Source: Oikopleura dioica (lineage: Eukaryota; Animalia; Chordata). From it: DNA of 64,000 nucleotides. Location: positions 12,896,001 to 12,960,000 of the forward strand of contig OU015566.1 of assembly GCA_907165135.1 (NCBI GenBank). The letters run 5' to 3'. Position 1 is the stretch's first letter; each line of letters begins with the position of its first letter. The notes below the pieces were generated by a model. The model was not told where the DNA came from, ran no database searches, and was given only the letters and a program-made list of their open reading frames with translations. Both the position numbers and the translations under genes were made by a program. Below are positions 1,876-44,300 of the stretch, in pieces.

Positions 1876-4800
1876 ACGGCACAGGCTTGCTCATACTCTC
1901 GTCGGTAGCAGCACAGGAAGTAGACCCACCGCAACTGCTCGATGCGCGGTCTTTCCGGTCCAATGCGGACAGGATACAGGCCATTCTGCAGTTCCATGTA
2001 AGTAAACACCTTTGATTCTGGTCGCTCATTTTTAGCTCAATTTTGAATACGGCTTTGGCGCGTATTCCGCTGCCGATCTCCTCAATTATGGATGTTGGTG
2101 CGATTTGGACAACCCTCATCGCCATGGCAAACCGGTCGATGATGTGGACAAGCTGTGTCACAAGCACTTTCGGTGCCATCGTTGTGTTTCGATGGACTCA
2201 AACTACGCCTGTTCTCCTGATGTGCAGTACGAGCTGACGTTTGATACATCGACACAGTCTCATTACTGCGCTGCGTCAAATACTGACCCGTGCGAGATGG
2301 AGGCGTGCCTTTGTGACTTGGATCTTATCACGCAAATGGTGCAGGAAGCTCCAACTTACGATTCTTACCAGGTTCTTGACGGGTACAACTACCCTGTCTG
2401 TGAATCCCCTGATTCGCCATCATTCCCAGTCGACAGCTGTTGCGGCGAGTATCCAGAGCGATATCCTTTTTCTCAAGTTTCTGGAAAAGGCTGCTGCAAC
2501 AACAAAGTCTACAATACAAACATGTTCCAGTGTTGCGATGGAATGGACATCGAGCCAATTGGAACTTGCTCCGTTGACCCATGTTTTCCGGATCCTTGTG
2601 CAAACGGAGTCTGTGTTCCCGTCAATACTGCGCGCAACTTCGACAACTTTCAGTGCAACTGCGAGACAGGCTGGACTGGTGAGCTCTGTGATCAGCCGAC
2701 TTGTGATCACCTGGACTGTTCCAGCAACGGTGCTCCTTACTGGAATGGCGACGGATGCATCTGTCACTGTGACGAAGGATTCACTGGCAGCAATTGCGAA
2801 GAAGGAGTGTGCGATGACTGGCCCTGCCTATTTGAAGGCGAGGCACAGTATCTTCCGGACGGCAGTTGCGGTTGCGTATGCCAAGATGGTTTTAGTGGCG
2901 ACGTGTGTCAAATCACTCAGTGCACTTCAGATCCGTGTCAAAATGGAGGAAGCTGCTCACTCACGCAAGCTACGTATATGTGCACTTGCGTAGCACCTTT
3001 CGCGGGGGTGAATTGTGAGATAAGCCCCTGTGAGCCAAGTCCTTGTGAAAATGGGGGCGAATGCTCTTTGAATTCCAATGGATATGTCTGTACGTGCCCT
3101 GAAACGCATACTGGCGAACACTGCGAACAAGAAATCACAACTACGACTACAACCACGACAACTACCACTACCACAACAACTACCACTACTACTACAATAA
3201 CAACTACCACTACCACAACATCTACAACAACAACTACAACAACAACTACAACAACGACAACAACAACGACAACAACAACAACTACAACAACAACTACGAC
3301 AACAACTACAACAACAACCACTACAACTACCACGACAACAACAACTACAACAACAACTACAACAACAACTACAACAACCACTACAACAACAACTACAACA
3401 ACAACTACAACAACAACTACAACAACAACTACAACAACAACTACAACAACAACTACAACAACAACTACAACAACAACTACAACAACAACTACAACAACTA
3501 CCACTACAACTACAACCACTACAGCAACAACTACTACTTCTACCACAACAACGACAACTACGACCTCCACAACAACTACAACAACGACGACTACAACTCC
3601 AAACCCATGCGATCCTAATCCATGTCTGAACTCAGGAATTCCGATTATAAACGGTGGAAGTTGTACCTGTATTTGTATGCCTGGATATGATGGAGATGTT
3701 TGCCAAATTACTCCATGCACTTCGAATCCCTGCTTTAACAATGGAACATGTAGTGTGGACGAGTCGACATATCTTTGTAGTTGTCCGCCTGGCTTCAGCG
3801 GCGAAGAATGCCAAGTCACGCCTTGTACTCCAGAGCCTTGTTTGAATAACGGTACATGTGCTGTGGACGGATCGACGTATCAATGCAGCTGTCCGCCTGG
3901 CTTCAGCGGCGAAGAATGCCAAGTCACGCCTTGTACTCCAGAGCCTTGTTTGAATAACGGTACATGTGCTGTGGACGGATCTACGTATCAATGCAGCTGT
4001 CCGCCTGGCTTCAGCGGCGAAGAATGCCAAGTCACGCCTTGTACTCCAGAACCTTGCTTGAATAACGGTACATGTACTGTGGACGGATCGGCGTATCAAT
4101 GCAGCTGTCCGCCTGGCTTTAGCGGCGAAGAATGCCAAGTCACCCCTTGTACTCCAGAGCCTTGCTTGAATAGCGGCACATGTACTGTAGACGGATCTAC
4201 GTATCAATGCAGCTGTCCGCCTGGCTTCAGCGGCGAAGAATGCCAAGTCACCCCTTGTACTCCAGAGCCTTGCTTGAATAACGGTACATGTACTGTAGAC
4301 GGATCGACGTATCAATGCAGCTGTCCGCCTGGCTTTAGCGGCGAAGAATGCCAAGTCACCCCTTGTACTCCAGAGCCTTGCTTGAATAGCGGCACATGTA
4401 CTGTAGACGGATCTACGTATCAATGCAGCTGTCCGCCTGGCTTCAGCGGCGAAGAATGCCAAGTCACCCCTTGTACTCCAGAGCCTTGCTTGAATAACGG
4501 TACATGTACTGTAGACGGATCGACGTATCAATGCAGCTGTCCGCCTGGCTTTAGCGGCGAAGAATGCCAAGTCACCCCTTGTACTCCAGAGCCTTGCTTG
4601 AATAGCGGCACATGTACTGTAGACGGATCTACGTATCAATGCAGCTGTCCGCCTGGCTTCAGCGGCGAAGAATGCCAAGTCACCCCTTGTACTCCAGAGC
4701 CTTGCTTGAATAACGGTACATGTACTGTAGACGGATCGACGTATCAATGCAGCTGTCCGCCTGGCTTTAGCGGCGAAGAATGCCAAGTCACGCCTTGTAC

Positions 4801-13873: not shown

Positions 13874-14406
13874 TAGGGTTTTTCACGGGAACGGCGCGGC
13901 GCGCTCCGGGCCTTCCACCGCCAAAATCGAACTCTTATTTTTGATCAAAAATGAAAATTTAAATTATCAAACGTACTAATTAAAGGTCGCAGATTCCAAA
14001 TATCGAATGTTTATTCTATATAAATTTCAAATTATGCCGAAAAATCACTTTTTGCACAAATTTTCTTACTTTTCTCCCGGAGTACACCAAAATACACCTC
14101 TGATTTTGAGATATGATTGATAATAGACCTTTATTACTTATCTCTCAAAAATTCAGAATTCAGCAACATTCAGCAGATACTCAAACTGAGGCTTAACTAA
14201 TCGGAAGGGCCTGGGCGCGAGCTTATTTACAGAGCGCCCGGGGAGCAGTCCGAACCTTTTTGCTCAAGGTGACAAAATCAGGTGGTTCGATGCTGAAATC
14301 CGGGGATTTCCGATTTTGGTATTTTTGGAATCAGTGGGTCAAATTTAGTCTACAGTGTGAATTTCAGAAACATAGCATAACTTTGAAATTCCCGTGAGAA
14401 ACCCTA
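13874..14406. mobile_element. hAT-type MITE, 533 bp
   Basis: 18-bp TIRs tagggtttttcacgggaa (13874-13891) and ttcccgtgagaaacccta (14389-14406), with 1 mismatch. Perfect 8-bp TSD ataatcta at 13866-13873 and 14407-14414. Confidence 0.9.
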
Positions 14407-32377: not shown

Positions 32378-35300
32378 CTAAAAAGAAGTAGTACAGCTAA
32401 GAGGGATCTGGGTTGGATAGGCTTGCAGCATATTTTATGGCAGTGGTGTTTTGGAAACATTTGGCTCAACCCGAAAAGATACCCTTCATCCCTTGTCGCT
32501 CGACAGATTGGCGGAGCCACTGCAGTTGCGGATTACTTATCATTGGCTGGTCCAGAGATCTCCAGTAGAGTGCTGAGAGTTCGACAGCAATTCTAGAGTA
32601 ACGGAATCGCGTGACAAACTCGATCATTGAATGATCACAAGATCTACTGTTGAGCTTTTTCTCGGCTAAACAAGATTAGCAAAAATGTCGGGCGGACTTG
32701 AATTTACCCATAAGATAAGCAGCAAATGCGGTGGCAGAAATCTCCTTTGACTGAATCAATGGCTGAAGCATGGTAACCAAGGCCGTGAAGTTTTCATTCT
32801 CAAGAAGAATCCAAGCGACGGTTTCGACTAAGCTCATATTTGGGCTCTCCAAAAGTTGTCGGCAAAGTGACATTTTTGACGAGTCCGGGAGTCGCTCAAG
32901 AATAGTTGGAAGAATTTGGACGTTTACTGGGAGGAATGGACAGTTGGAAAAGTGCTTCAACGCGAATCCGAACAAATTTGGAGCGTCCTTTCTGCGCATT
33001 GACCAGCTCAGAGCCTCCAAAGAGATGAACTCTTGATCCTGTTTCGCGACTTGTAGTGCGACTCCAAAGACCTCACTTAGATCACTCTCGTCATGTTCAT
33101 CGTACAGACGTTCAATGAGAATGAAGGAAAGCCAAATCCAAGGGACGGTTTCTTCACTAAGCTGGGAAGTCTGCGTGAATTTCGGAAGCGTTTCTGACAT
33201 TTCTTCCTTGAAGAATTTCGGGTAGTATCGCTCTAAGACTCCTCGAAGAAGAGCGCGAAGACTGACAGATCCTTCAGTCAAGGAAGTTTCTGTACCAACT
33301 TCGTAGAAAGGGATGATCATGTCTTCAATTGTCCTACAATTCAAAAGTAAGATAAAATAACTATTATATATATTTCTTACGATAAGGCGAATGCACAGAG
33401 CTCCTCATTCTCGACATCAAAAATGAATTTCCTCGCAACCAAGTAGGACATCTTCGGATGATTACTTAATTTACAAAGAGCTTCATTAAAAATTCCCATG
33501 GGCTCGACTCCCGGACAGCTTCCGACAAGCAACCAGACTAGCTTGCATTTTGATAGTTGCCTAGCAATAGAATGGGCAAACGCGGCGTGGCTTCCATCAA
33601 GAAGCACTAGAATCTCAAGCAAGGAAGTGACTAGATTTTCTGATTGCTCACTGTCGTCCCAGTTTGATACGGCGCGCTGGATGCCCTCGGAGATCTCTTC
33701 GAATACATCGCTCTTATTTATTGCGTCCGTGTTGTGAGTGAAAGGAGTAAGCTTTGGCGAGTGAATGGAGAATGACTCATGTGGAAAATCAAAGGTCAAG
33801 GGCACCTCCATTGAGAGATCGCAGGAATACTCCAATGGAAGGACTTTCATTGGGAAGGCATTAAACACGCGCAGATGAATAATTACGCACCAGATAAAGC
33901 ATTCAAATGAGCTTGGCAAATCGACGATATCAGGCAAACCCGATAAAAAGTCAGCGGCTTCGGATAAATTTGGCTCCATTGAATACAGAAATGCTCGATA
34001 AACAGCAGCATTGACGAACTCAAGATAATAACACTCCACGTCTCCGCTGCCTAATATTCTCGCTATATAACGCTCAATTGTTTTCGCTTTTTGCTTGGAG
34101 TTATTGATCCGATACTGCCAGAAATCACGATCAAGGGAGCAGTTGTCCTCGCAAAAGTCAATTACTTCCTCGAACTGAAGGCTCTCTGGCAGATTTAATT
34201 CAGAATGAAGCGCGAAAAAGTTTCTCCAAAGAGTTGAATTCGCCGGACTAGCTTCAAGTCCGTGGCAGATCGCGGCTAGAGCATATTTCGGACCATTGAG
34301 AATATTCGAACTCATGTATTTCTGAACAAGCTCAACAAGCGCTGGAACATTTTTAGCGTCATCTTTTGCTGTCGCTTCGAGTTCTTTGATAGAGCGCTCT
34401 AATTGCTCGTCGTAGAAATATCGCTCTTGTTGAGTAGCATGTTCGTCGTCTATGTATTCAGGTTGATTTTCGTCCTCAGGATAATCTGGCTGCTGCGCTA
34501 CTTTCGTCATTTTTCGAACGTTTTGCTTGCATTTGAATCCAGAGGATGCGTATTTAGAGACGATATGAGGCTCGTCTACGTTACTCTCCTTGTTGATTTC
34601 TTTGAAATAGAATTAAGCCATTGAAAACATGGAATAAGCTTACCTTCTACCAAAAGCACGCATTTCTGAGCCATATTGAGTTCAAGCTCCGACGGTAACA
34701 TTCTGTTCAAATACGCTTGAGTAGCTTTCAACTGATCGCTGTAATCAGTGAATGCGTCCATCTTGATAATGTCTCTGTTGTACGCGAGTAAATCGAGAAA
34801 CACTTCATGGCCTTGCATGGTTATGTCACGACGGTGCTGTCCTATGCATCGATCGTCGTTGCATCTACCAGAAAAGCTAAATTTTAAATAATAAATCAAG
34901 GTCGAAACTAGCCTCAACAAACCTATAACTAGGGATATCGCTTAAATTTCTAGGTACCCGAAAAAAGGGTCAAAATCAATTTTTAGATGGATGATCTAGT
35001 AGAACTTTTGACGAGGATTTCAATGCTGTCAAAATCATTTCATAAAAATCAGTCAGTTTCGTAAAAATGATGTGTCAGGGGGTGTTTTTTTCGATCAGGG
35101 TGAAACTTTCAAAATTTTGGAAATTGAAAATGCTAGACTAGCATAAATTTGGACGAGGATTCCAAATCTGCAAAAAATTTCACTGACGCACCTTGCAATC
35201 GCTAGAAATGAGTGTTCGGGAGTTGTTTTTTTCCTTCTCGACGCTTGTGGCGCTTTTCTGTTTTCAGCTGCGCGCTGATTGGTAGACGCTCCTGAGAGCC

Positions 35301-38300
35301 TTGCTCACAAAAATGCTCGAACAGGTTCAGCAAAATGATGATTTCTCGGGACTGAAACGTTGAAATTACATGATTCTTGGACCAAAAAAATTCTTGAAGA
35401 CCACTTTATCAAATTTGATATAAAAATAATGTTTTTTTGATTGCAAAAACCAGTAAATGACTTTCAATTATCGTTTTTCTTTCATGGTTGAGTAAATAAA
35501 AGGGCCAGAATTTCTGAAAGATAATCCTGAAGATGAAGCTGTATTGGTTGATGACGTGGTAAAGAGTTTTTTTGAGGTTGCATGAATTTGGAGTGTTTCA
35601 CTGATTATCTGAGCCATTCGCCTGTGGCGCGTTTATGTGGCGCCCTCTTTTGGAGAGCCGGGTGGTACTCATCTCGGTTTACGGCGCAGATTTTCATTTT
35701 ATATTAGAGCTTGAGATTTAAGAAAAAAATGACCGAAGGAGAAACACCCACCCCATCAGAAGGTTTGAACTTTTAAGCCCAAGTACATTTACGATAGCGA
35801 AAATGTTAAGTAAAGACATGATTTATGTAAGAAATATTTACAAATTTCATTTATCAAAATATTTTATTTGGGCTTAAAAGTTCAAACCTTTTTTTTCGAT
35901 TCTTCCTGCCATCAAAAAGCGAAGCACGCCCGACGATGGATCATGTGCTTCATAAGCGTAGCTGCTTTAATCTTGGGGATAATTGGTAAGTCAAAATCAT
36001 TATGATAGAATTTTTCGAACCAAAATAGTTTCTTGTTCAAAACCCGGTTAACTTTTACTTTAGAAACCGTTGAAACAGAAAATGCTCCTTGGACAATGAT
36101 GACAACAACTACAACGCCAACAACAACTACCACACGAGAGTTCATTTGCGGTCCCGGAGGCGCTTCCCGACAATATGCAATTTGGAGATTGAAAAATTGC
36201 TAAATTTCTTTGCCACTATGTCTTTTTATTACTGCTAATTGAAAAATATAATAATATCAATCATGGAATTTTTATCTGTCTATTCTTTTTGAGCAGCTGT
36301 TGGGTTAGGTAAAAGAAAAGATCAACGATGAGTAAAACGACGTGTTGGAATCTCCGGGTTTCAGCGGAGGGCGGACGGAAGTACATGGAAGACGTCACTG
36401 CGGTGCACTTTGAGCGAGTCAACTCTGTTACATTCGCAAGCTTCGCGTTCACACTTTTTCATCATTATTATATTGTGCTTCAGGATCAATTGATGGGATT
36501 CATCAAACGAGAGAAGGGTTTCTTCTCGACAAGATGTGATCTTGTGAAGAAGGCCATCCGCGCTGGATTCCTTGCTTGCCACGAAGCCATGGCTAAAAAA
36601 CTTCGTGAATAGCAATCAATTTGAAATAGAAATAAACGAGAGATAAATTTAATTATGCTGACTGGCAGAAAACAGTTTTGGGACATCCTTGTACTGCTGA
36701 GACCACGGCCGCACTAGTGATTATCCCTGAAAACAAACTGTACGTTGCTCCTGTGGGTGATTTGGCGGTGATCATGGGCATTCAAAGAGATGACGACGCT
36801 CTGCTGGAAACAATCACTTTGATCGAAGATCACAAACCAGAAAGTCTGAAAGAAAGGAGGCGAATAGAAGCGCACGGTGGCACCGTGATCAACAAGACCC
36901 GTGTCAACCGCGTTGTCTGGGAGAGCCCGAAGTTGAGCCACTCGGGAGCCGTCCGACGCTCTACAGAACTCGACGAAATCGCCTTCCTCGCCGTCGCAAG
37001 GAGTCAGGGTGATCTTTGGTCATGGAACACGAAAACCAACTCGTATGTGGTAAGTACTTCTCTTACCGCAAACAGAGCATGAAGAAGCTCAATTGACGAA
37101 AAAAACTTTCACGATTTTGCTCTGAATCCGTGTTCACGGTCGGATGATAAGCAAACGTTCCAATTTCTGATGAGCTTAATGAACATATAATTAAAAAAAT
37201 ACACCATGTTTCGGTAGTTTAAAAATTAATTTAGGTCAGTCCTGATCCGGATGTGGAAGTACACGACTTAAAAAATCAGGATCTCGCTTCATCATTTTGG
37301 CGTCGGAGTGAGTAACCAACATGATCAGATCACATGACGCGGTGAACATGGTCTCTGAGTTCGAGGCGCGAAAACGCGCGGCGAGGTTGCCGGAACATCA
37401 GCTCATGAACTGGCCAGAAACGCACTCAGAAGATGGTCAGAAAGGAACATGCGCGCGGACAACTCCTCGGCGATTGTCGTCTACATCGAAAAGAAAAAGA
37501 TGGAGCCCAAGAACTGCGCGTAGAGCTAGGAGAGCACGAACAAGAACCGACACGTCAAGACGCCAGTATCCGAGAAGATCGCTAGGAGGATAGCTCAACT
37601 GAGACCGCCACTTACGGGAGTGTCCCAGATCAAGACTGCTCCACTCAAGACGTCAAGAAAGAGAGTGACTACCGAGAACACTACCGAGAACGACTGGCTT
37701 CATATAATTTTTAGTTAAAAAAGAATCAGTTTGGGAGAAACTGAATTGTGCCACCCTGCGCCGCCCGGCTCGGCCCTTAACCAAACGGAATTCTAGTTCT
37801 TCTTTGGTGGTAGTTTCCCTTTTCCAATTATATTGTTAAACTAGAGATTGCTCACTAAGAAACAGGCTTCATAATAAGCCCCTTAACTCGATGATAGCTA
37901 AGTCCCAAAAAAATTGTTCGACCTAAAAGTTTGCGAGATCGGCGGTGAGGCACCCCTTAAGCGCGTATTTTCTGATAAAGAATTAATCGGGTCGGAAGGG
38001 TTCAACTCTCGCTCTGGTTCAGACCTGTTTCCTTGAACATGTTTGGGTCGGAAGCTTAAGAACCGAGCGACGCTAGACGGCGCAGAGCGGCGCAGGGCGG
38101 CGAAATTCAGTACACCTCATCAATATTATTTATTAAAATTTATTAAAATAAATAATTTATAGAAGCCCATTTAAGATAATCGGAATATTGAGAAAACGTT
38201 CAGCCATATAAAGCATATTGAAAATTACGACTTTCGATCCCAGAATATTAAAATATGGCGATCTGCGATAGCAAAGGTAATTGTGGCGAACACTCATAAC

Positions 38301-41300
38301 AGAAGAACACAAACAGCATTAGGTCTTTCCCAAAAATATTGTAATATTTTATAGCAAAATATGGCGACAGAATTCCTTGATGATTTGGATGAAATACCCG
38401 CGGAGGACTTAGTATGGAAAGCATACCGTCGAAAATCTCTTCAAAAAGAAGAAGATCAAAATCATGAATTAATGATTAAGCAACAAATTTTAAGCTGTTC
38501 ATAATCATTTTTGTTTATTCAAGAAGAATCAACAAGATCATTTACAGTTTTGTCAAGTTGTCGAAAATGATTTAAGAAGGTTTTAACTTAACAGTCAATA
38601 AAATTTTTTTTAATTATCTAATAGTTACCCTTGGTATATTTTTGTCGGGAATTTTTTCTTTCCATCTTGAAGCTTTCGCAAATTTGTTCAAACGCATCAG
38701 TCAGAGATCTTTATTTTCTCAATAAAATCGCAATTTGCGAATATTTTGCGATTGTGAAGCGTAATTTCGCAATCGCAAAAACCTTTTTGATCGATTTGCG
38801 AGCGTATTGTTTTGCTAGAACCTCCGTTATCGCCAATAAGTCGCGTATTGAGATTTTTCGCGAATTTCTGTATTTTTAAAATGAGTTTTCTTTGACTGAA
38901 ATTTCTTAATTTTTTCAAAAATTTTTTTCTATTCATTAAAATTTCGCAAATAGCGACAAAATCGCAATTCGCGAAAAAATCGCAGTCGCGTCGGAATTTC
39001 AGGAGTTCTTTGCTTCACGATTGCATCGCAATCGCAATTGAATTTTGACGAAAATTTAGATCCCTGGCATCAGTAAAAGTTTCCAGTCGTGTTTCTCGGC
39101 GTTGAAGCTTATCTGTATCCGGTAAAGCTAAATAATCATAAAAAATTGGACTAACAAATTGTAAACTTAATTGAAACTCTTGTTCGAGCGTTTGCGTTCC
39201 CGTCCAACTCGAAAGATCTCTTATACGGGGTTCATATCAAGTTTTCTGAGCGCTCTTTGCAAGAACAGGGGAGCTTTTGAATACTGGACCCGATCTTAAA
39301 AGTAGACCAAATTCTCCATGTCGAATTTTTCTATTGAGATCGCGTAGAGTTGCCTCGATAAATCCCTTTGATTTTTGAGCAATCGCAATTTTGAAGCTTA
39401 AAATGAGTCATCATCTAGTTTTCGAAATAACCTACATTATAAAATGGGTGACAGGTATATTCAAATCTGGAAACAGCAAAAACTCGTTGACGTGTTCACC
39501 AATAGTTTTGTAAAAAGAACATGCTACGGAATAGTTTTTATTTTTGGGTAGAAATTTTTCACCATTAGTATTTGATTCATCAATGACAAAATTGCTTCCG
39601 AAATATGCCCGATTGTTGAAATTGTACTCTTCTAAGCTCATTTGATTGGCAGCGCACTGTGGTTGGTAGATCAAGAAGGGAAAAATTGCATAAAGCGACC
39701 GAATCTATCATGAGTTTTCACGAATTTTCACGAAAAATCCTTGACAGAACATTTCTGTCTGACGCCGACCGGTCCAAAAGGGGTTATTTTCAAACAGCGG
39801 CCGTAGGCGGCCGAGGACGGCCTTTGTCAGTGTCCCTGGAAAAAAAAAGAATAGATATCGCTTTATGCAACCTGCCCCTTCAGAGAAGCGGTTGTTCTCT
39901 GGAATGGATAATTCTCATCTTAAAAAAAGATTTTGATAGCTGTTTTTATAGGTTAACTTTTTAAAAATATCAGAAATTATTTCAAAATCATTTCCTTGTA
40001 GTCCAAATTTTAAATAAATTTCCAAAACGCTCGAACAGTACTGTCCTGACTCGAATTTTCCAAGAAATATTTTTCCTCGCTGTGAAAGTTTTTTTAATAT
40101 TTGAATATTTCCGCTATTAAAAATAATGTTAGAACTTTCTCTCTAAAGTCGTCTTCATACTTTCTCTTTCTTCATATTTAGGAAAACGTTCATTCAAATT
40201 GAAATCATTTTTAGTAAGAACGAAGTGAAAAAAATGGATCAAGAATATTTTAACAAAATTCATACTTAAATTGATATGAAGCAAGTTTTTTTCAGAAATT
40301 ATGGTTCTTGGCATTTCACCAATTTTTAATCTTGCCTAAAGCCACGAAAGATCGATTTGATAATGATCGATAATTTTTTCAAAAATATTTGAATTTGAAA
40401 GATGAAGAAAATCAATTCGCGTAGGAGCATTGTGCGCAAAATGTGTGATTCCATCGATTATGAAAGCAAAGACGATGTCGCGATTTAAAAATATAGTCGA
40501 GTAGTGTTTAGTCGAGTGAACGATCTGGCCAAATAAGATCTTCAGCAGAGATCAGTATGTTTGTTTTATAATATACCTTTTCCGACATTTCATCGAACAT
40601 TCAAAAGATCTCTTCTTCCTTTCCAATAATGATTACATCGTAAGCATCTTTGAAAAGAAAGTACAAATCCTTATTAACTTCGTACTCGGCAAGATCTTTT
40701 TTGAGAAGAATGACCTTGTGTCTTCCACCCGGGCCATTTTTGATGTCTTCTCCAAGCCAGTCTTCTCCGAGTCCGAATTTTTTGCTTTTTAGACCAGAGT
40801 ATTTTACAGATTCTACTCAACAAAGAAGAGATCTCGCTCTTATTTCATTGTGTCTTTAAAGTATTTTTACTATTCCCTTCAGAAGTTCAGCTTTACTTTC
40901 TTCACAAAAAAGAACTCTTTTACGTAATAATTCATAAATTTCTTTTCTTTAAGTAATAAGAGTGGGAGCAATTCATGGGAGATGTAGGTGGCTCAGGTTG
41001 ACTTGCTCTCGGCGTCAGTCTAGGTTAGTCTTAGCAATTCGAATTCTCGAAGCTTGCTCATCTCGGACAGAAAAAAGCGGTCCAAGATAAGATCGAGAGA
41101 CTCAAACAGGAGCGCTTGCAAAAGGAAAAAACCAAGTTGGAGGAGCACAAACAGATCGAAGAAGCTAAACTAACCACTGAAGAGAAATTGAAGCAAGGTT
41201 GTCAGAAGCTTGAAGCAATCAAGGTCGTCTCCAACAACGCTCTACTCTCATTAAACTCTGTCGGTAATGATTTGGAAACGATTCCGACCGCCCTCCTGGG

Positions 41301-44300
41301 CAAAAACGAACGCGTTGTCTTCAAGTTAGGTCAGTTCATTCTCAGTCTCATCGTCAATTTCTCTGGATATTGCCCAGTTACTCTGCTCGCTGCGTCGAAG
41401 ATTCCTTCAAATCCAGAACTCGAAAAGAACGATTTCAAAGGATGGTTCTCCTAAGATTGCACCAACAGATTCCTCTTCATCACAAAAGAAAAGCTCCAAG
41501 AGCAAAACCCAGGGCACCTGTTCGTTCTTATGGCTCACTGCATGGCGCATTTGACCAACGATCTGAATCCCCAGTTCCGAAACGAGTTCTACCGGCTCCT
41601 CGCAAAGATATCGACTCACATCTTCCAAATTCAAACTGCACCTGAAATGCAACTGCCACTTGATTCTCTGGAAAGTCAAAAGAAAATGTTGAGTACACGC
41701 CTGCAGAAATCAAAGCCATTTTAGAGCGAAAAGAAAACTTGATCTGAGCCGAGGTGAGCTTGACAGTGATCTTGAGACACTTCCAGTCGCCAGTGGCCTT
41801 GCAGATGTCGTTACCAATCTTCTTGTGGGAGAGACCGAGGGGGCACGGACTTCGCAAACAACAACTCGGAGGTAGACCTCGACGATGGGAGCGGTGGGAT
41901 CGAACTTAGGCAGATATTTCCACTCTTGTCAACAAACGAAGCTTCAAATTCACTCAAGCTTGTCAGGCTCCTAGAGACGGACAATGCAATTAAATTTTTC
42001 GTATGAAAAATTGAAAAAAACTACCTAATCTACCTATAATTTTTAATAAAAAACTCATTTTCTTTATGAAATATTCTTAATAACATTTAAATATCCTTAT
42101 TCATCAAAAAAAACAACTTAAAAGCTCCAAAAATATGCAATTTTATGAAAAATCGCATAAAATAGTAAAGAGAAAAGAATGTGAGTCTGGCTAGCTTGGC
42201 CATGCAGCGCGCGCGCCCCCGTGCGGCCGCCTCCAAAATGACGCAACGCCGCTCAGAATTCACCTCGGAAAACTTTAAAAATTCATATTTTCAAAACGCG
42301 AGGTGCGTCAGTGAATTTTTTTACAGATTTGGGTTTCTCAGCCCAATATCTATTAGGAAAAAATAAAAAATCATTAACGACAAAACAGTTCTCGTACTGA
42401 TCCGAAAAATGAGGTTTTTGAAGGCCATTTTTACGAAACTGACTGATTTTTATGAAATGATTTTGACAGCATTGAAATCCTCGTCAAAAGTTCTACTAGA
42501 TCATCCATCTAAAAATTGATTTTGACCCTTTTTTCGGGTACCTAGAAATTTAAGCGATATCCCTACCTATAACCACAGATGGGCGCGTTGCAGTCTACTT
42601 TATGCGTATAAGTAGCCGAGGCTATTGAAAAATTCTCGCGGAAATATGGCGAGAATCGATACGATCGAAATTTAAGGAGTGGCGATTTGAATTTGCCCTT
42701 GTTCTCAAGTGGTTTCATGTCTTTTGCGAGATACGTTTTCGGCAGAATATCCCGTTCGGTTGCAATCGGCATTTTGTCATTTTCTGTTATTTCTTCGACG
42801 AGTTTTATATGTGCAATTTTATGTCGGTGTGTGCAAAGAGATTTGATTTTTTCTTCGAAAGTGCTTCGTGTAACGAGTGAATATGGATCTGGCGGGGTTG
42901 TGACGCGCGCTGGCATTTCTGGCAATGGCTCGAACTCGTAATCATCGTCGGGTGGTACTGGGCTACTTCTAGTTGCGAGAAGGGGTTCTCCGTTTCCCTC
43001 GCCTCCGTGGATGAGCTGTGTTTGTTGTTGAACAACTACGAATAAAAGATAGTGTAAATCCTTCAAAACAACTTACTTTGTTGATCAATCTTCTCTTGAG
43101 TTGAATCCGCGAGTTTTTTTAGCTTACGCTCCAGCTCAGCTTTTTGCTCATTCAGCTTAGCCCGCATAATTATCTTCCTATTTTCATCCGCGTCAGCATC
43201 ATCAAGTCCATACTGCTCCTGCAAATTGCTAATTTCTACTCGCCGCTCTAAAATGTCCGTCTTCGCTGTTTCAATGTCTATCACCATATTGTTCACAATA
43301 TCCTTTATCGAGCGCTGATATTCTGTATTTTCTCGCAAGTAGCGTTCATATGACGCAACTTTGACCATCAGTACTTCTAGTGATTCTTTGACTTGTTTCT
43401 TCTCTTCTATCTTTTTTGATCGCAATTCTTTGAAGCTCTTGATTGACTGTCTGTCTCGCACGATTTTCGCATGATGATGTCTTATCGATTGCTTGAGCTT
43501 ATCAATTTGCTGTCTTGCTTGCTCCTCGTTCTCGACTTCATCATCTGTCGATTCTATGTCTTCTGATGATGAGTAATTATCAACCACAACAGGAGGATGT
43601 AAGGGAAGAACATCGTTAGCCTGCAAAGAATCATTGATGCTTAGATCTGGAAGAACAGGAGCTTGTTCTGTGAAACTCGTCTCAAGAATTGAACTGTTCA
43701 TTGTCTCTTCATTTTGCAATCCGCCATCTCTAGAATCCATGGTGTAATCAGCTAGTGTTGAGCCTTGTGTTGCGTCTTGTGAGTTGAAAGTTCTGTCCAT
43801 CACAGCTTGGTCCGTGTGATACTCATCGTCTCTAGTTGTTGTCATCGGCACTTCAAAAACAGGACTTTCCCCTGCCTCTCGATTTTGATCTGTTGTTGGT
43901 CTTGGCTCTATTTCCACGGTCATTGCGGATGATTCAGGCACTTCAGTCGCTGGAGGAGCGGATAAAGTCGGAGAGATCTCGTCCATAATCGTGAAGGAGC
44001 CATTGATTCCAGCTTGATCAGCTGATTCCGAGCGCGGGCGCGCAACGACATCGACGTAGATTGGGTGTTCGAAGCTAGTGGATCTATGGCGGCCTTCGGC
44101 GTAGGAGCTCAAATTTGTATCTGGAGGTAGTTTATTTGGATTGGCATGAATTTTAATCCCACGTCTTGCCATGACTTGCTTGAGGAGTTGATTTCGTAGC
44201 TCGGCTTCTGATTCTGAAGGCTGTCTTTTCGCGCTCCTCGATTCGTTCGCACTCGAATTGTCCGGCGGCCTCACTGTTCTTTTATAACCTGGATCGTCAC

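What the first reader, a model, noticed from the sequence alone, without database searches (positions are those of the whole stretch)
34922..42573. A 7.6-kb Pack-type hAT transposon ferrying pieces of at least five host genes
Seen directly: identical 140-bp TIRs starting TAGGG, a perfect 8-bp TSD (cctataac), an extra subterminal inverted block, and no recognisable transposase. Inside, in mixed orientations, lie an intron-bearing PPM1D copy, a PLOD glycosyltransferase fragment, an RPL12 fragment, a small TM-protein gene, two unassigned coding remnants and three nested inverted-repeat elements. An 8-bp TSD with (C/T)AGGG ends is characteristic of hAT. Multi-gene capture by TIR elements is established mainly in plants (Pack-MULE, Pack-CACTA/Pack-TYPE). 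A multi-cargo Pack-hAT in a compact chordate genome would be a gene-shuffling system that I do not know to be described.
Basis: partly seen in the sequence, partly recalled or inferred. Interest (0 to 1): 0.92.

Follow-up and report, generated by a model that had tools for sequence, protein, structure and literature searches.

The report
Mobile transposon carrying dead host-gene pieces
A 7.6-kb cut-and-paste transposon with no enzyme of its own sits in an intron of a tunicate (Oikopleura dioica) gene, is missing from that site in other animals, and carries decayed copies of parts of at least four host genes; the kind is already known in animals, but this is a large, recently moved example.

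Summary
Window 34930-42565 (7,636 bp) has 140-bp terminal inverted repeats (TIRs) that are 100% identical and start TAGGG. A perfect 8-bp target-site duplication (TSD) flanks it, and no transposase domain was found. Removing the element and one TSD copy restores a 58-nt GT-AG intron and an open ZFC3H1-like reading frame.

Contigs from four public DNA runs show that the insertion is young. One run holds the flank-TIR junction. Three runs have flank contigs that leave the reference exactly at 34929|34930. The terminal 300-500 bp is 2-7 times flank depth, with other flanks, so this is a low-copy mobile family.

Four host-gene pieces are confirmed:
- a near-complete, intron-bearing PPM1D pseudogene, whose apparent parent (91-92% alike, frames intact where checked) is on a separate contig in every run;
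- a PLOD glycosyltransferase fragment;
- an RPL12 N-terminal fragment;
- a 290-codon fragment of an uncharacterised coiled-coil gene.

The "small TM-protein gene" is probably the antisense reading of a threonine-codon run. Pack-type TIR elements, 208 of them hAT, are already described in 100 animal genomes (PMC8277862), so this is a new member of a known kind. Its size, its multiple cargo and its transposition after capture are unusual. hAT membership rests on the ends and TSD only. Earlier notes of this scan cover this same stretch and TAGGG/8-bp-TSD elements elsewhere in this genome.

The parts
34922..34929 (.). Left copy of the 8-bp target-site duplication, cctataac
   Evidence: identical to 42566-42573.
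34930..35069 (+). Left terminal inverted repeat, 140 bp, starts TAGGG
   Evidence: 100% identical to the reverse complement of 42426-42565; 4-7 times flank depth in four runs, and contigs with other flanks end at 34930.
35070..35500 (+). Left subterminal backbone. It holds a second copy of a ~140-bp unit and the 35138-35196 block, which is mirrored at the right end.
   Evidence: 78-82% to 42298-42356; depth falls from 4.3x to 2.3x flank, and contigs of three of the four runs (X1, X3, X5) restart at 35254/35255.
36093..36134 (+). Threonine-codon (ACN) low-complexity run.
   Evidence: matches 3248-3504 of the window. (many contigs with ACN-repeat loose ends at 36101/36134). (no family).
36311..37691 (+). 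Near-complete, intron-bearing PPM1D (PP2C) pseudogene. It lacks 53 bp holding the DGHGG motif and the first 5' splice site, has a stop at about 37309 and two 1-bp deletions (about 37272 and 37373), and lacks 9- and 12-bp stretches.
   Evidence: a second version, 91-92% alike, on separate contigs in all four runs carries the missing bases.
37740..38111 (.). Nested inverted-repeat element (30-nt arms), member of a multi-copy family
   Evidence: I5; 3.5 times flank depth, and contigs in X1 and X5 join 37768 to 38079.
38724..38984 (.). High-copy repeat with two 48-bp units (38724-38771 and 38937-38984)
   Evidence: the bin with the second unit (38900-39099) reaches about 8-16 times flank depth (about 3-6 times in 38700-38899), with loose ends at those four places; 18-bp tandem units.
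40440..40816 (-). PLOD (lysyl hydroxylase/glycosyltransferase) N-terminal GT-domain fragment, decayed. The clear part is 40604-40816.
   Evidence: GT_PLOD 58.8 bits, profile positions 23-91 of 246. (LH3 residues 40-102, E 1.6e-9). The extension to about 40440 is by eye only; two searches found nothing there.
41056..41741 (+). Fragment (residues 148-437) of an uncharacterised coiled-coil host gene, with one stop, one frameshift and deletions of about 54 and 5 codons
   Evidence: P0014, E 2e-32, 84% identity. (tblastn map). (no Pfam family).
41750..41928 (-). RPL12 (uL11) N-terminal fragment of about 60 codons with one frameshift; it abuts the previous fragment
   Evidence: Ribosomal_L11_N 24.4 bits, below the cut-off. 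(RPL12 residues 33-65, E 1.7e-9). (PKFDP... in the neighbouring frame).
42170..42425 (-). Right subterminal backbone with the mirrored 42298-42356 block
   Evidence: Not covered by reads.
42426..42565 (-). Right terminal inverted repeat, 140 bp
42566..42573 (.). Right copy of the 8-bp target-site duplication
34579..34871 (-). Host exon downstream of the insertion (ZFC3H1-like, holds [10 protein letters not shown]). The 58-nt intron lies at 34872-34929 and 42573.
   Evidence: empty-site reconstruction gives an open frame across the junction. (zf-C3H1 15.4 bits, below the cut-off).

Best explanation
It is a non-autonomous cut-and-paste DNA transposon of a low-copy Oikopleura dioica family with hAT-type ends (TAGGG...CCCTA, 8-bp TSD). 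It has no transposase. It must be moved in trans by an enzyme encoded elsewhere that recognises the 140-bp TIRs and the repeated subterminal blocks (inferred). Its interior is filler: decayed fragments of at least four unlinked host genes in mixed orientation, plus nested repeats. The filler was probably copied in during repair of double-strand gaps by template switching (inferred; this is the origin proposed for Pack-TIR elements). The capture predates this insertion. The PPM1D copy differs from its apparent parent by about 8% and six indels. The insertion itself has a perfect TSD, is absent from the site in other individuals, and its allele in another study's run differs from the window by only 0.15-0.6%. 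So the loaded element kept transposing after capture. It landed between bases +1 and +2 of a 58-nt intron of a ZFC3H1-like gene. The T of the TIR rebuilds a GT, so the host transcript could still be spliced correctly (possible, not shown).
For: Structure. Precise empty-site reconstruction with an open host frame. Polymorphism: X1 record 1 crosses flank into TIR with 0 mismatches. X3 record 9, X5 record 17 and X6 record 27 fit the flank at 97-99% and then run on unlike exactly at 34929. In X3 the interior depth (52-72) is about a third of total flank depth. Family: TIR bins are 4-7 times flank depth in all four runs, and three X5 contigs carry other flanks before 34930. X5 holds 35254-38250 at about 99.5% identity but has an empty site here and nothing at 38300-38699 or 39100-40299. 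Cargo. Parent PPM1D on its own 9.1-kb contig in X6, which lacks the element's unique interior: record 31. No transposase domain. Kind known in animals.
Against: No transposase with matching ends was examined, so both the superfamily and the trans-mobilisation are inferred. The letters beyond 34929 in the 'empty' contigs were not shown, so the empty site is inferred from the exact breakpoint, not read. The right junction and 40300-42565 were not covered by reads. Parents of the PLOD, RPL12 and coiled-coil pieces were not located in this genome. The 140-bp perfect TIRs are far longer than typical hAT TIRs. X1 may be the sample the assembly came from, so it is not independent.
Confidence: 0.78

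Rival explanations
1. It is the same kind of element but not hAT. It would be a non-autonomous member of another superfamily that makes 8-bp duplications (P, Merlin, some Mutator-like, Zisupton, Novosib).
For: The 140-bp TIRs with repeated subterminal blocks are atypical for hAT. The TSD fits the hAT target consensus nTnnnnAn at only one of its two fixed positions. No transposase was tested.
Against: TAGGG fits the hAT end consensus YARNG. A second TAGGG/8-bp-TSD MITE with an 18-bp TIR lies in the same window. Earlier notes of this scan report hAT transposase-bearing elements in this genome, but I did not check them.
Confidence: 0.15
2. It is a composite (macro-)transposon. Two separate small elements would flank a stretch of pseudogene-rich DNA at a donor site, and their outer ends were used together, so the 'cargo' would be passenger chromosome rather than captured filler.
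For: The large size and the mixed content including nested repeats. X5 seems to hold only the left half of the interior.
Against: There are no inner termini: a self-comparison finds only the outer TIR pair and the mirrored subterminal block. Two cargo pieces are truncated genes that abut at 41741/41750, which is not a natural gene arrangement.
Confidence: 0.06
3. It is a decayed autonomous element. Part of the unassigned 2.3 kb (38100-40440) would be a ruined transposase, and the host pieces are later insertions.
For: About 2.3 kb of the interior has no assignment. It holds several 70-105-codon open stretches on the minus strand.
Against: Nine pieces from this region gave no family at E<=1 in Pfam. 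Nothing relevant appeared in the PDB sequence searches of three of them. One piece tried in the 5.8-billion-protein search had no relative.
Confidence: 0.08
4. It is an assembly artefact or a non-transposon rearrangement that happens to have inverted ends.
For: The best-holding run may be the assembly's own sample.
Against: The TSD is perfect and the host intron and frame are restored exactly. The interior is present at 99.4-99.85% in a run from another study, at a depth consistent with a segregating allele. Three runs break at the exact boundary.
Confidence: 0.02

Closest known systems
Pack-TIR elements of animals, in particular Pack-hAT (Tan et al. 2021, Nat Commun 12:4280, PMC8277862)
   Same: A non-autonomous TIR element with a TSD, host gene fragments inside, a parent copy elsewhere and no transposase. 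hAT is the commonest carrier there (208 of 370). The FoSTeST and gap-filling origin models fit the abutting truncated fragments.
   Different: There the captured piece has a median size of 224 bp, and only 4 of 370 elements are multi-copy or transposed. Here the element is 7.6 kb, has at least four cargo pieces including a 1.4-kb near-whole gene with introns, and transposed after capture. That paper's text does not mention tunicates, Ciona or Oikopleura.
Pack-MULEs and Pack-CACTA / Pack-TYPE elements of plants
   Same: Several fragments of unlinked genes in mixed orientation lie between long TIRs. The cargo is mostly non-functional, and the elements stay mobile after capture (own knowledge; mentioned).
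   Different: A different superfamily (Mutator or CACTA, with 9-bp or 3-bp TSDs), a different kingdom, and far higher copy numbers.
Non-autonomous hAT elements and MITEs of O. dioica with TAGGG ends
   Same: The same end pentamer and the same 8-bp TSD as the 533-bp MITE at 13874-14406 of this window. Earlier notes of this scan report the same for elements elsewhere in this genome (not checked by me).
   Different: The TIR sequence is unrelated beyond TAGGG. The TIR is 140 bp against 18 bp, and this element has a large gene-derived interior.

Membership tests
hAT superfamily | 8-bp target-site duplication | tested here: met
   cctataac on both sides, 8 of 8.
hAT superfamily | Termini fitting 5'-YARNG | tested here: met
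   TAGGG...CCCTA.
hAT superfamily | Target consensus nTnnnnAn (a tendency, not a strict rule) | tested here: inconclusive
   CCTATAAC has the A at position 7 but C at position 2.
hAT superfamily | Short TIRs of about 10-25 bp (typical, not defining) | tested here: not met
   The TIRs are 140 bp and 100% identical. Long-TIR hAT relatives exist, so this lowers the assignment but does not exclude it.
hAT superfamily | Mobilised by a hAT transposase (RNase-H-like DDE with a hAT C-terminal dimerisation domain) whose own element has matching ends | not testable with these tools
   None is present in cis. The rest of the genome could not be searched. Metagenome scans with the TIR tip found nothing. 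Earlier notes claim hAT transposases in this genome but give no sequence.
Pack-TIR (Pack-hAT) | Non-autonomous element bounded by TIRs and a TSD | tested here: met
Pack-TIR (Pack-hAT) | Interior holds fragments of host protein-coding genes | tested here: met
   PPM1D, PLOD, RPL12, coiled-coil gene P0014.
Pack-TIR (Pack-hAT) | A parental copy exists elsewhere in the same genome | tested here: met
   Met for PPM1D only. A version 91-92% alike, with the frames restored where checked, lies on separate contigs in all four runs, including a 9.1-kb contig in X6, which lacks the element's unique interior. Not tested for the other three pieces.
Pack-TIR (Pack-hAT) | Transposition of the loaded element (multi-copy or polymorphic, with its own TSD) | tested here: met
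   The site is apparently empty in X3 (one haplotype), X5 and X6. X5 holds the left interior at about 99.5% although its site is empty. The letters of the empty allele were not seen.
Composite (macro-)transposon | Inner termini of two complete flanking elements | tested here: not met
   The self-comparison finds no inner TIR copies.

The most novel reading that the evidence does not exclude
O. dioica would host an actively transposing Pack-hAT subfamily. Its members would swap cargo between copies: X5 appears to carry a sibling with the same left cargo but another right half, and about seven arms of this exact TIR type against two in X1 and X3. Its TAGGG end would let it land in or create 5' splice sites without killing the host gene. 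Together this would be a live route for moving exon-sized gene pieces into introns in a chordate that repairs breaks without classical end-joining.
Probability: 0.25. Interest if true: 0.65.

Novelty: new member of a known kind. Interest (0 to 1): 0.45.

Why it matters
Gene capture by cut-and-paste transposons is well documented in plants. In animals it has been catalogued mostly as small, single-copy, immobile cases. This case is a large element with at least four captured pieces that demonstrably moved after capture and still segregates in the population. It lies in one of the most compact and fastest-rearranging chordate genomes. That makes it a usable natural case for two questions: how filler DNA is acquired during transposon gap repair in a species that relies on microhomology-mediated repair, and how such insertions are tolerated inside genes. 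No cargo piece is intact and none of the listed RNA runs' contigs holds its words, so there is no evidence that it has made a new gene.

Tried and rejected
- Sibling search outside the window. The 24-nt TIR tip and the 24-nt predicted empty-site junction both gave 0 hits in JGI metagenome contigs. A findings search by sequence was blank.
- Exact-protein look-ups of two element ORFs found nothing on record.
- Naming the 41035-41721 remnant. Pfam, Atlas, PDB and the word-indexed protein search all failed. The exhaustive HMMER search then found the parent family. My guess that its AHCMAH motif marked a hAT transposase was wrong: it is a host coiled-coil gene. The DNA of P0014's contig was not available.
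- The remaining interior. Pieces 39435-39704, 39918-40142 and 40339-40551 gave nothing in Pfam, and the PDB searches gave none or only chance-level hits; 39435-39704, the one piece tried in the protein search, gave nothing there either. The PLOD-derived stretch therefore cannot be extended with confidence beyond 40604-40816.
- RNA.
- The 'age paradox' was considered and largely set aside. Flank haplotypes in this population already differ by 2.4-3.1%, so 8% cargo divergence is only moderately old. The age of the insertion is independent of the age of the capture.
Full report
**1. Observation**

The element runs from 34930 to 42565 (7,636 bp). Its two ends are inverted copies of each other, 140 bp long and 100% identical, and start TAGGG. 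The 8 bp cctataac stand directly outside both ends. The 31-nt tip occurs nowhere else in the 64-kb window, and no match is expected by chance.

Aligning the first 400 bp of each end shows a sharp step:
- identity is 100% for bases 1-140;
- it drops to about half for bases 141-208;
- it recovers to about 80% in a block at bases 209-268 of both ends (35138-35196 against 42298-42356).

That block also resembles part of the TIR itself (I3). Each end therefore carries repeated subterminal units.

**2. It is an insertion into a gene**

On the minus strand, removing 34930-42573 leaves ...TATAG|GTTTGT...(58 nt)...TGGTAG|ATGC.... The spliced frame then reads through as ...[21 protein letters not shown]....

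The element lies between intron bases +1 and +2. The T of TAGGG rebuilds a GT (AG|GTAGGG).

**3. Reads**

I laid contigs of four DNA runs on 34300-40299.

*Junction and empty site*
- X1 has a 3,593-nt contig that fits 34300-34959 with no mismatch and stops 30 nt into the TIR, as expected at a repeat.
- X3 record 9, X5 record 17 (3,831 nt) and X6 record 27 fit the flank at 97-99%. They then continue for 99 to more than 750 letters that are unlike the stretch, starting exactly at 34929|34930.
- I read that as the empty allele. The letters themselves were not printed, so this is an inference.
- In X3 the interior is present at 99.4-99.85% identity, at depth 52-72. The divergent flank contig has depth 116, which fits a segregating insertion.

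*Copy number of the ends*
- In X1 the bin with the TIR has depth 1,641 against a flank depth of 221. The next two bins have 961 and 502. The other runs show the same pattern.
- In X5 three contigs match from 34930 on but have other sequence before it.
- The terminal 300-500 bp therefore belongs to a low-copy family inserted at other sites.
- Most family copies carry C at 34972 and 34976.
- In X1 and X3 the reference letters there have about the depth of this element's two arms. In X6 they are absent. In X5 they have about seven times flank depth.

*Interior in X5 and X6*
- X5 has an apparently empty site here, yet holds 35254-38250 at about 99.5% identity.
- X5 shows nothing at 38300-38699 or 39100-40299. 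That suggests a sibling with the same left cargo elsewhere. Holes in contig data prove nothing, so this is a lead.
- X6 lacks all single-copy interior.

**4. Cargo**

*(a) PPM1D, 36311-37691 (+)*
- Pfam PP2C scores 64 bits. Relatives are named protein phosphatase 1D by JGI.
- Against a metagenome contig with a full PPM1D gene (L001) the copy is collinear from the ATG to near the C-terminus, with introns at the same places.
- It is dead. The last 45 nt of exon 1 (IFDGHGG...), the 5' splice site and the start of intron 1 (53 bp less than in the second version) are missing. There is a TGA in the ASDG motif, and the frame shifts twice.
- All four runs also hold a second version that is 91-92% alike, introns included (for example X6 record 31, a 9.1-kb contig).
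- That version has the extra C at 37272, the extra G at 37373, 9 nt coding ANQ, 12 nt at 37521, and 61 letters in place of 8 at 36447-36454.
- These are exactly what the pseudogene lacks, so I take that version to be the parent gene.

*(b) PLOD, 40604-40816 (-)*
- GT_PLOD scores 58.8 bits. The piece matches human LH3 residues 40-102 at E 1.6e-9.
- By eye the similarity goes on to about 40440 with stops. The searches did not confirm this.

*(c) Coiled-coil gene fragment, 41056-41741 (+)*
- The exhaustive search found a 491-aa protein (P0014) that is 84% identical over 76 residues.
- tblastn maps residues 148-437 onto the element, with a stop, a frameshift and two deletions.
- The protein has no Pfam family.

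*(d) RPL12, 41750-41928 (-)*
- The piece matches RPL12 residues 33-65 at E 1.7e-9. The PKFDP... start lies in the neighbouring frame.
- Fragments (c) and (d) are both truncated and abut within about 8 bp. That is not a natural gene arrangement.

*Other interior features*
- Its poly-Val is the antisense of an ACN run. That run matches a mucin-like gene in the window and many loci in the reads.
- Of the nested inverted repeats only 37740-38111 is multi-copy.
- A different repeat at 38724-38984 is the most abundant.
- No transposase domain was found in 27 stop-free interior pieces.

**5. Mechanism**

Shown:
- it is a TIR/TSD-bounded insertion without a transposase;
- it is polymorphic;
- its ends are shared by other loci;
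- its cargo is derived from host genes, and one parent has been seen.

Inferred:
- it is mobilised in trans by a hAT-type enzyme encoded elsewhere;
- the cargo was acquired by template switching during gap repair. This is the origin proposed for animal Pack-TIRs. It is plausible in a species reported to use microhomology-mediated repair;
- capture predates this insertion. Cargo and parent differ by about 8% and six indels, whereas the insertion allele in X3 differs from the window by 0.15-0.6%, and flank haplotypes differ by 2.4-3.1%.

This largely answers the 'age paradox' of note s1-342547. What remains unexplained is the step from 100% to about 50% identity at base 141 of the ends. Selection for transposition competence, or copying of one arm onto the other, could produce it. 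I could not test either.

**6. Comparison with what is known**

Pack-TIR elements are described in 100 animal genomes. There are 370 of them, 208 on hAT. The median cargo is 224 bp, and only four are multi-copy (PMC8277862). That paper's text does not mention tunicates.

The O. dioica genome papers I read leave 44% of repeats unclassified and do not describe hAT elements.

This element is therefore a new member of a known kind. It stands out for its size, its number of cargo pieces and its evident mobility after capture. hAT membership rests on the ends and TSD, because the defining transposase link could not be tested.

**7. Limits**
- Only one read-laying run of 6 kb was possible, so the right junction and 40300-42565 are untested by reads.
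- X1 may be the assembly's own sample.
- Parents of three cargo pieces were not located in this genome.
- No RNA was laid.

Noticed in passing
window 13874-14406: A 533-bp MITE with TAGGG...CCCTA ends, a 17/18-matching TIR and a perfect 8-bp TSD ATAATCTA. It has the same end type as the 7.6-kb element but is unrelated in sequence beyond the pentamer.
   Followed up: partly
window 34872-34929 and 42566-42580, minus strand: The element lies between bases +1 and +2 of a 58-nt intron. The TSD duplicates the exon end plus G, and the TIR's first T rebuilds a GT (AG|GTAGGG). Exact removal as a 7.7-kb intron is therefore possible. No RNA evidence was obtained.
   Followed up: partly
window 38724-38771 and 38937-38984: Two 48-bp units rich in TCGCAA/TTGCGA motifs lie in two bins at about 3-16 times flank depth in all four runs, highest over the second unit, with loose ends at their borders. 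This looks like a high-copy short repeat family nested in the element.
   Followed up: no
window 36579-37680 (reads): The apparent parent PPM1D version has only 0.3-0.5 of flank depth in every run (for example 68 against 221 in X1). It could be a split haplotype or a sex-linked locus. This is unexplained.
   Followed up: no
window 34972 and 34976 (reads): The reference-type TIR letters have about seven times flank depth in X5, about two arms' worth in X1 and X3, and none in X6. The copy number of this TIR subfamily seems to differ between individuals.
   Followed up: no
window 38254-38280 and 38358-38501, plus strand: There are two starts of the form aaaatATGGCGA. The first is followed by a gtaatt donor after 7 codons. 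The second opens a 47-codon ORF ([17 protein letters not shown]...). These may be captured 5' exons of unknown genes. They were not searched.
   Followed up: no
P0014 residues about 300-420: The parent of the coiled-coil fragment has a conserved block (...VTLLAA...FSYD.TNRFL...AHC.AH...GDL.ND.NP.F) with no Pfam family. The Atlas gives only weak leads to SprT/WLM-like metallopeptidase folds (scores 0.74-0.77).
   Followed up: partly
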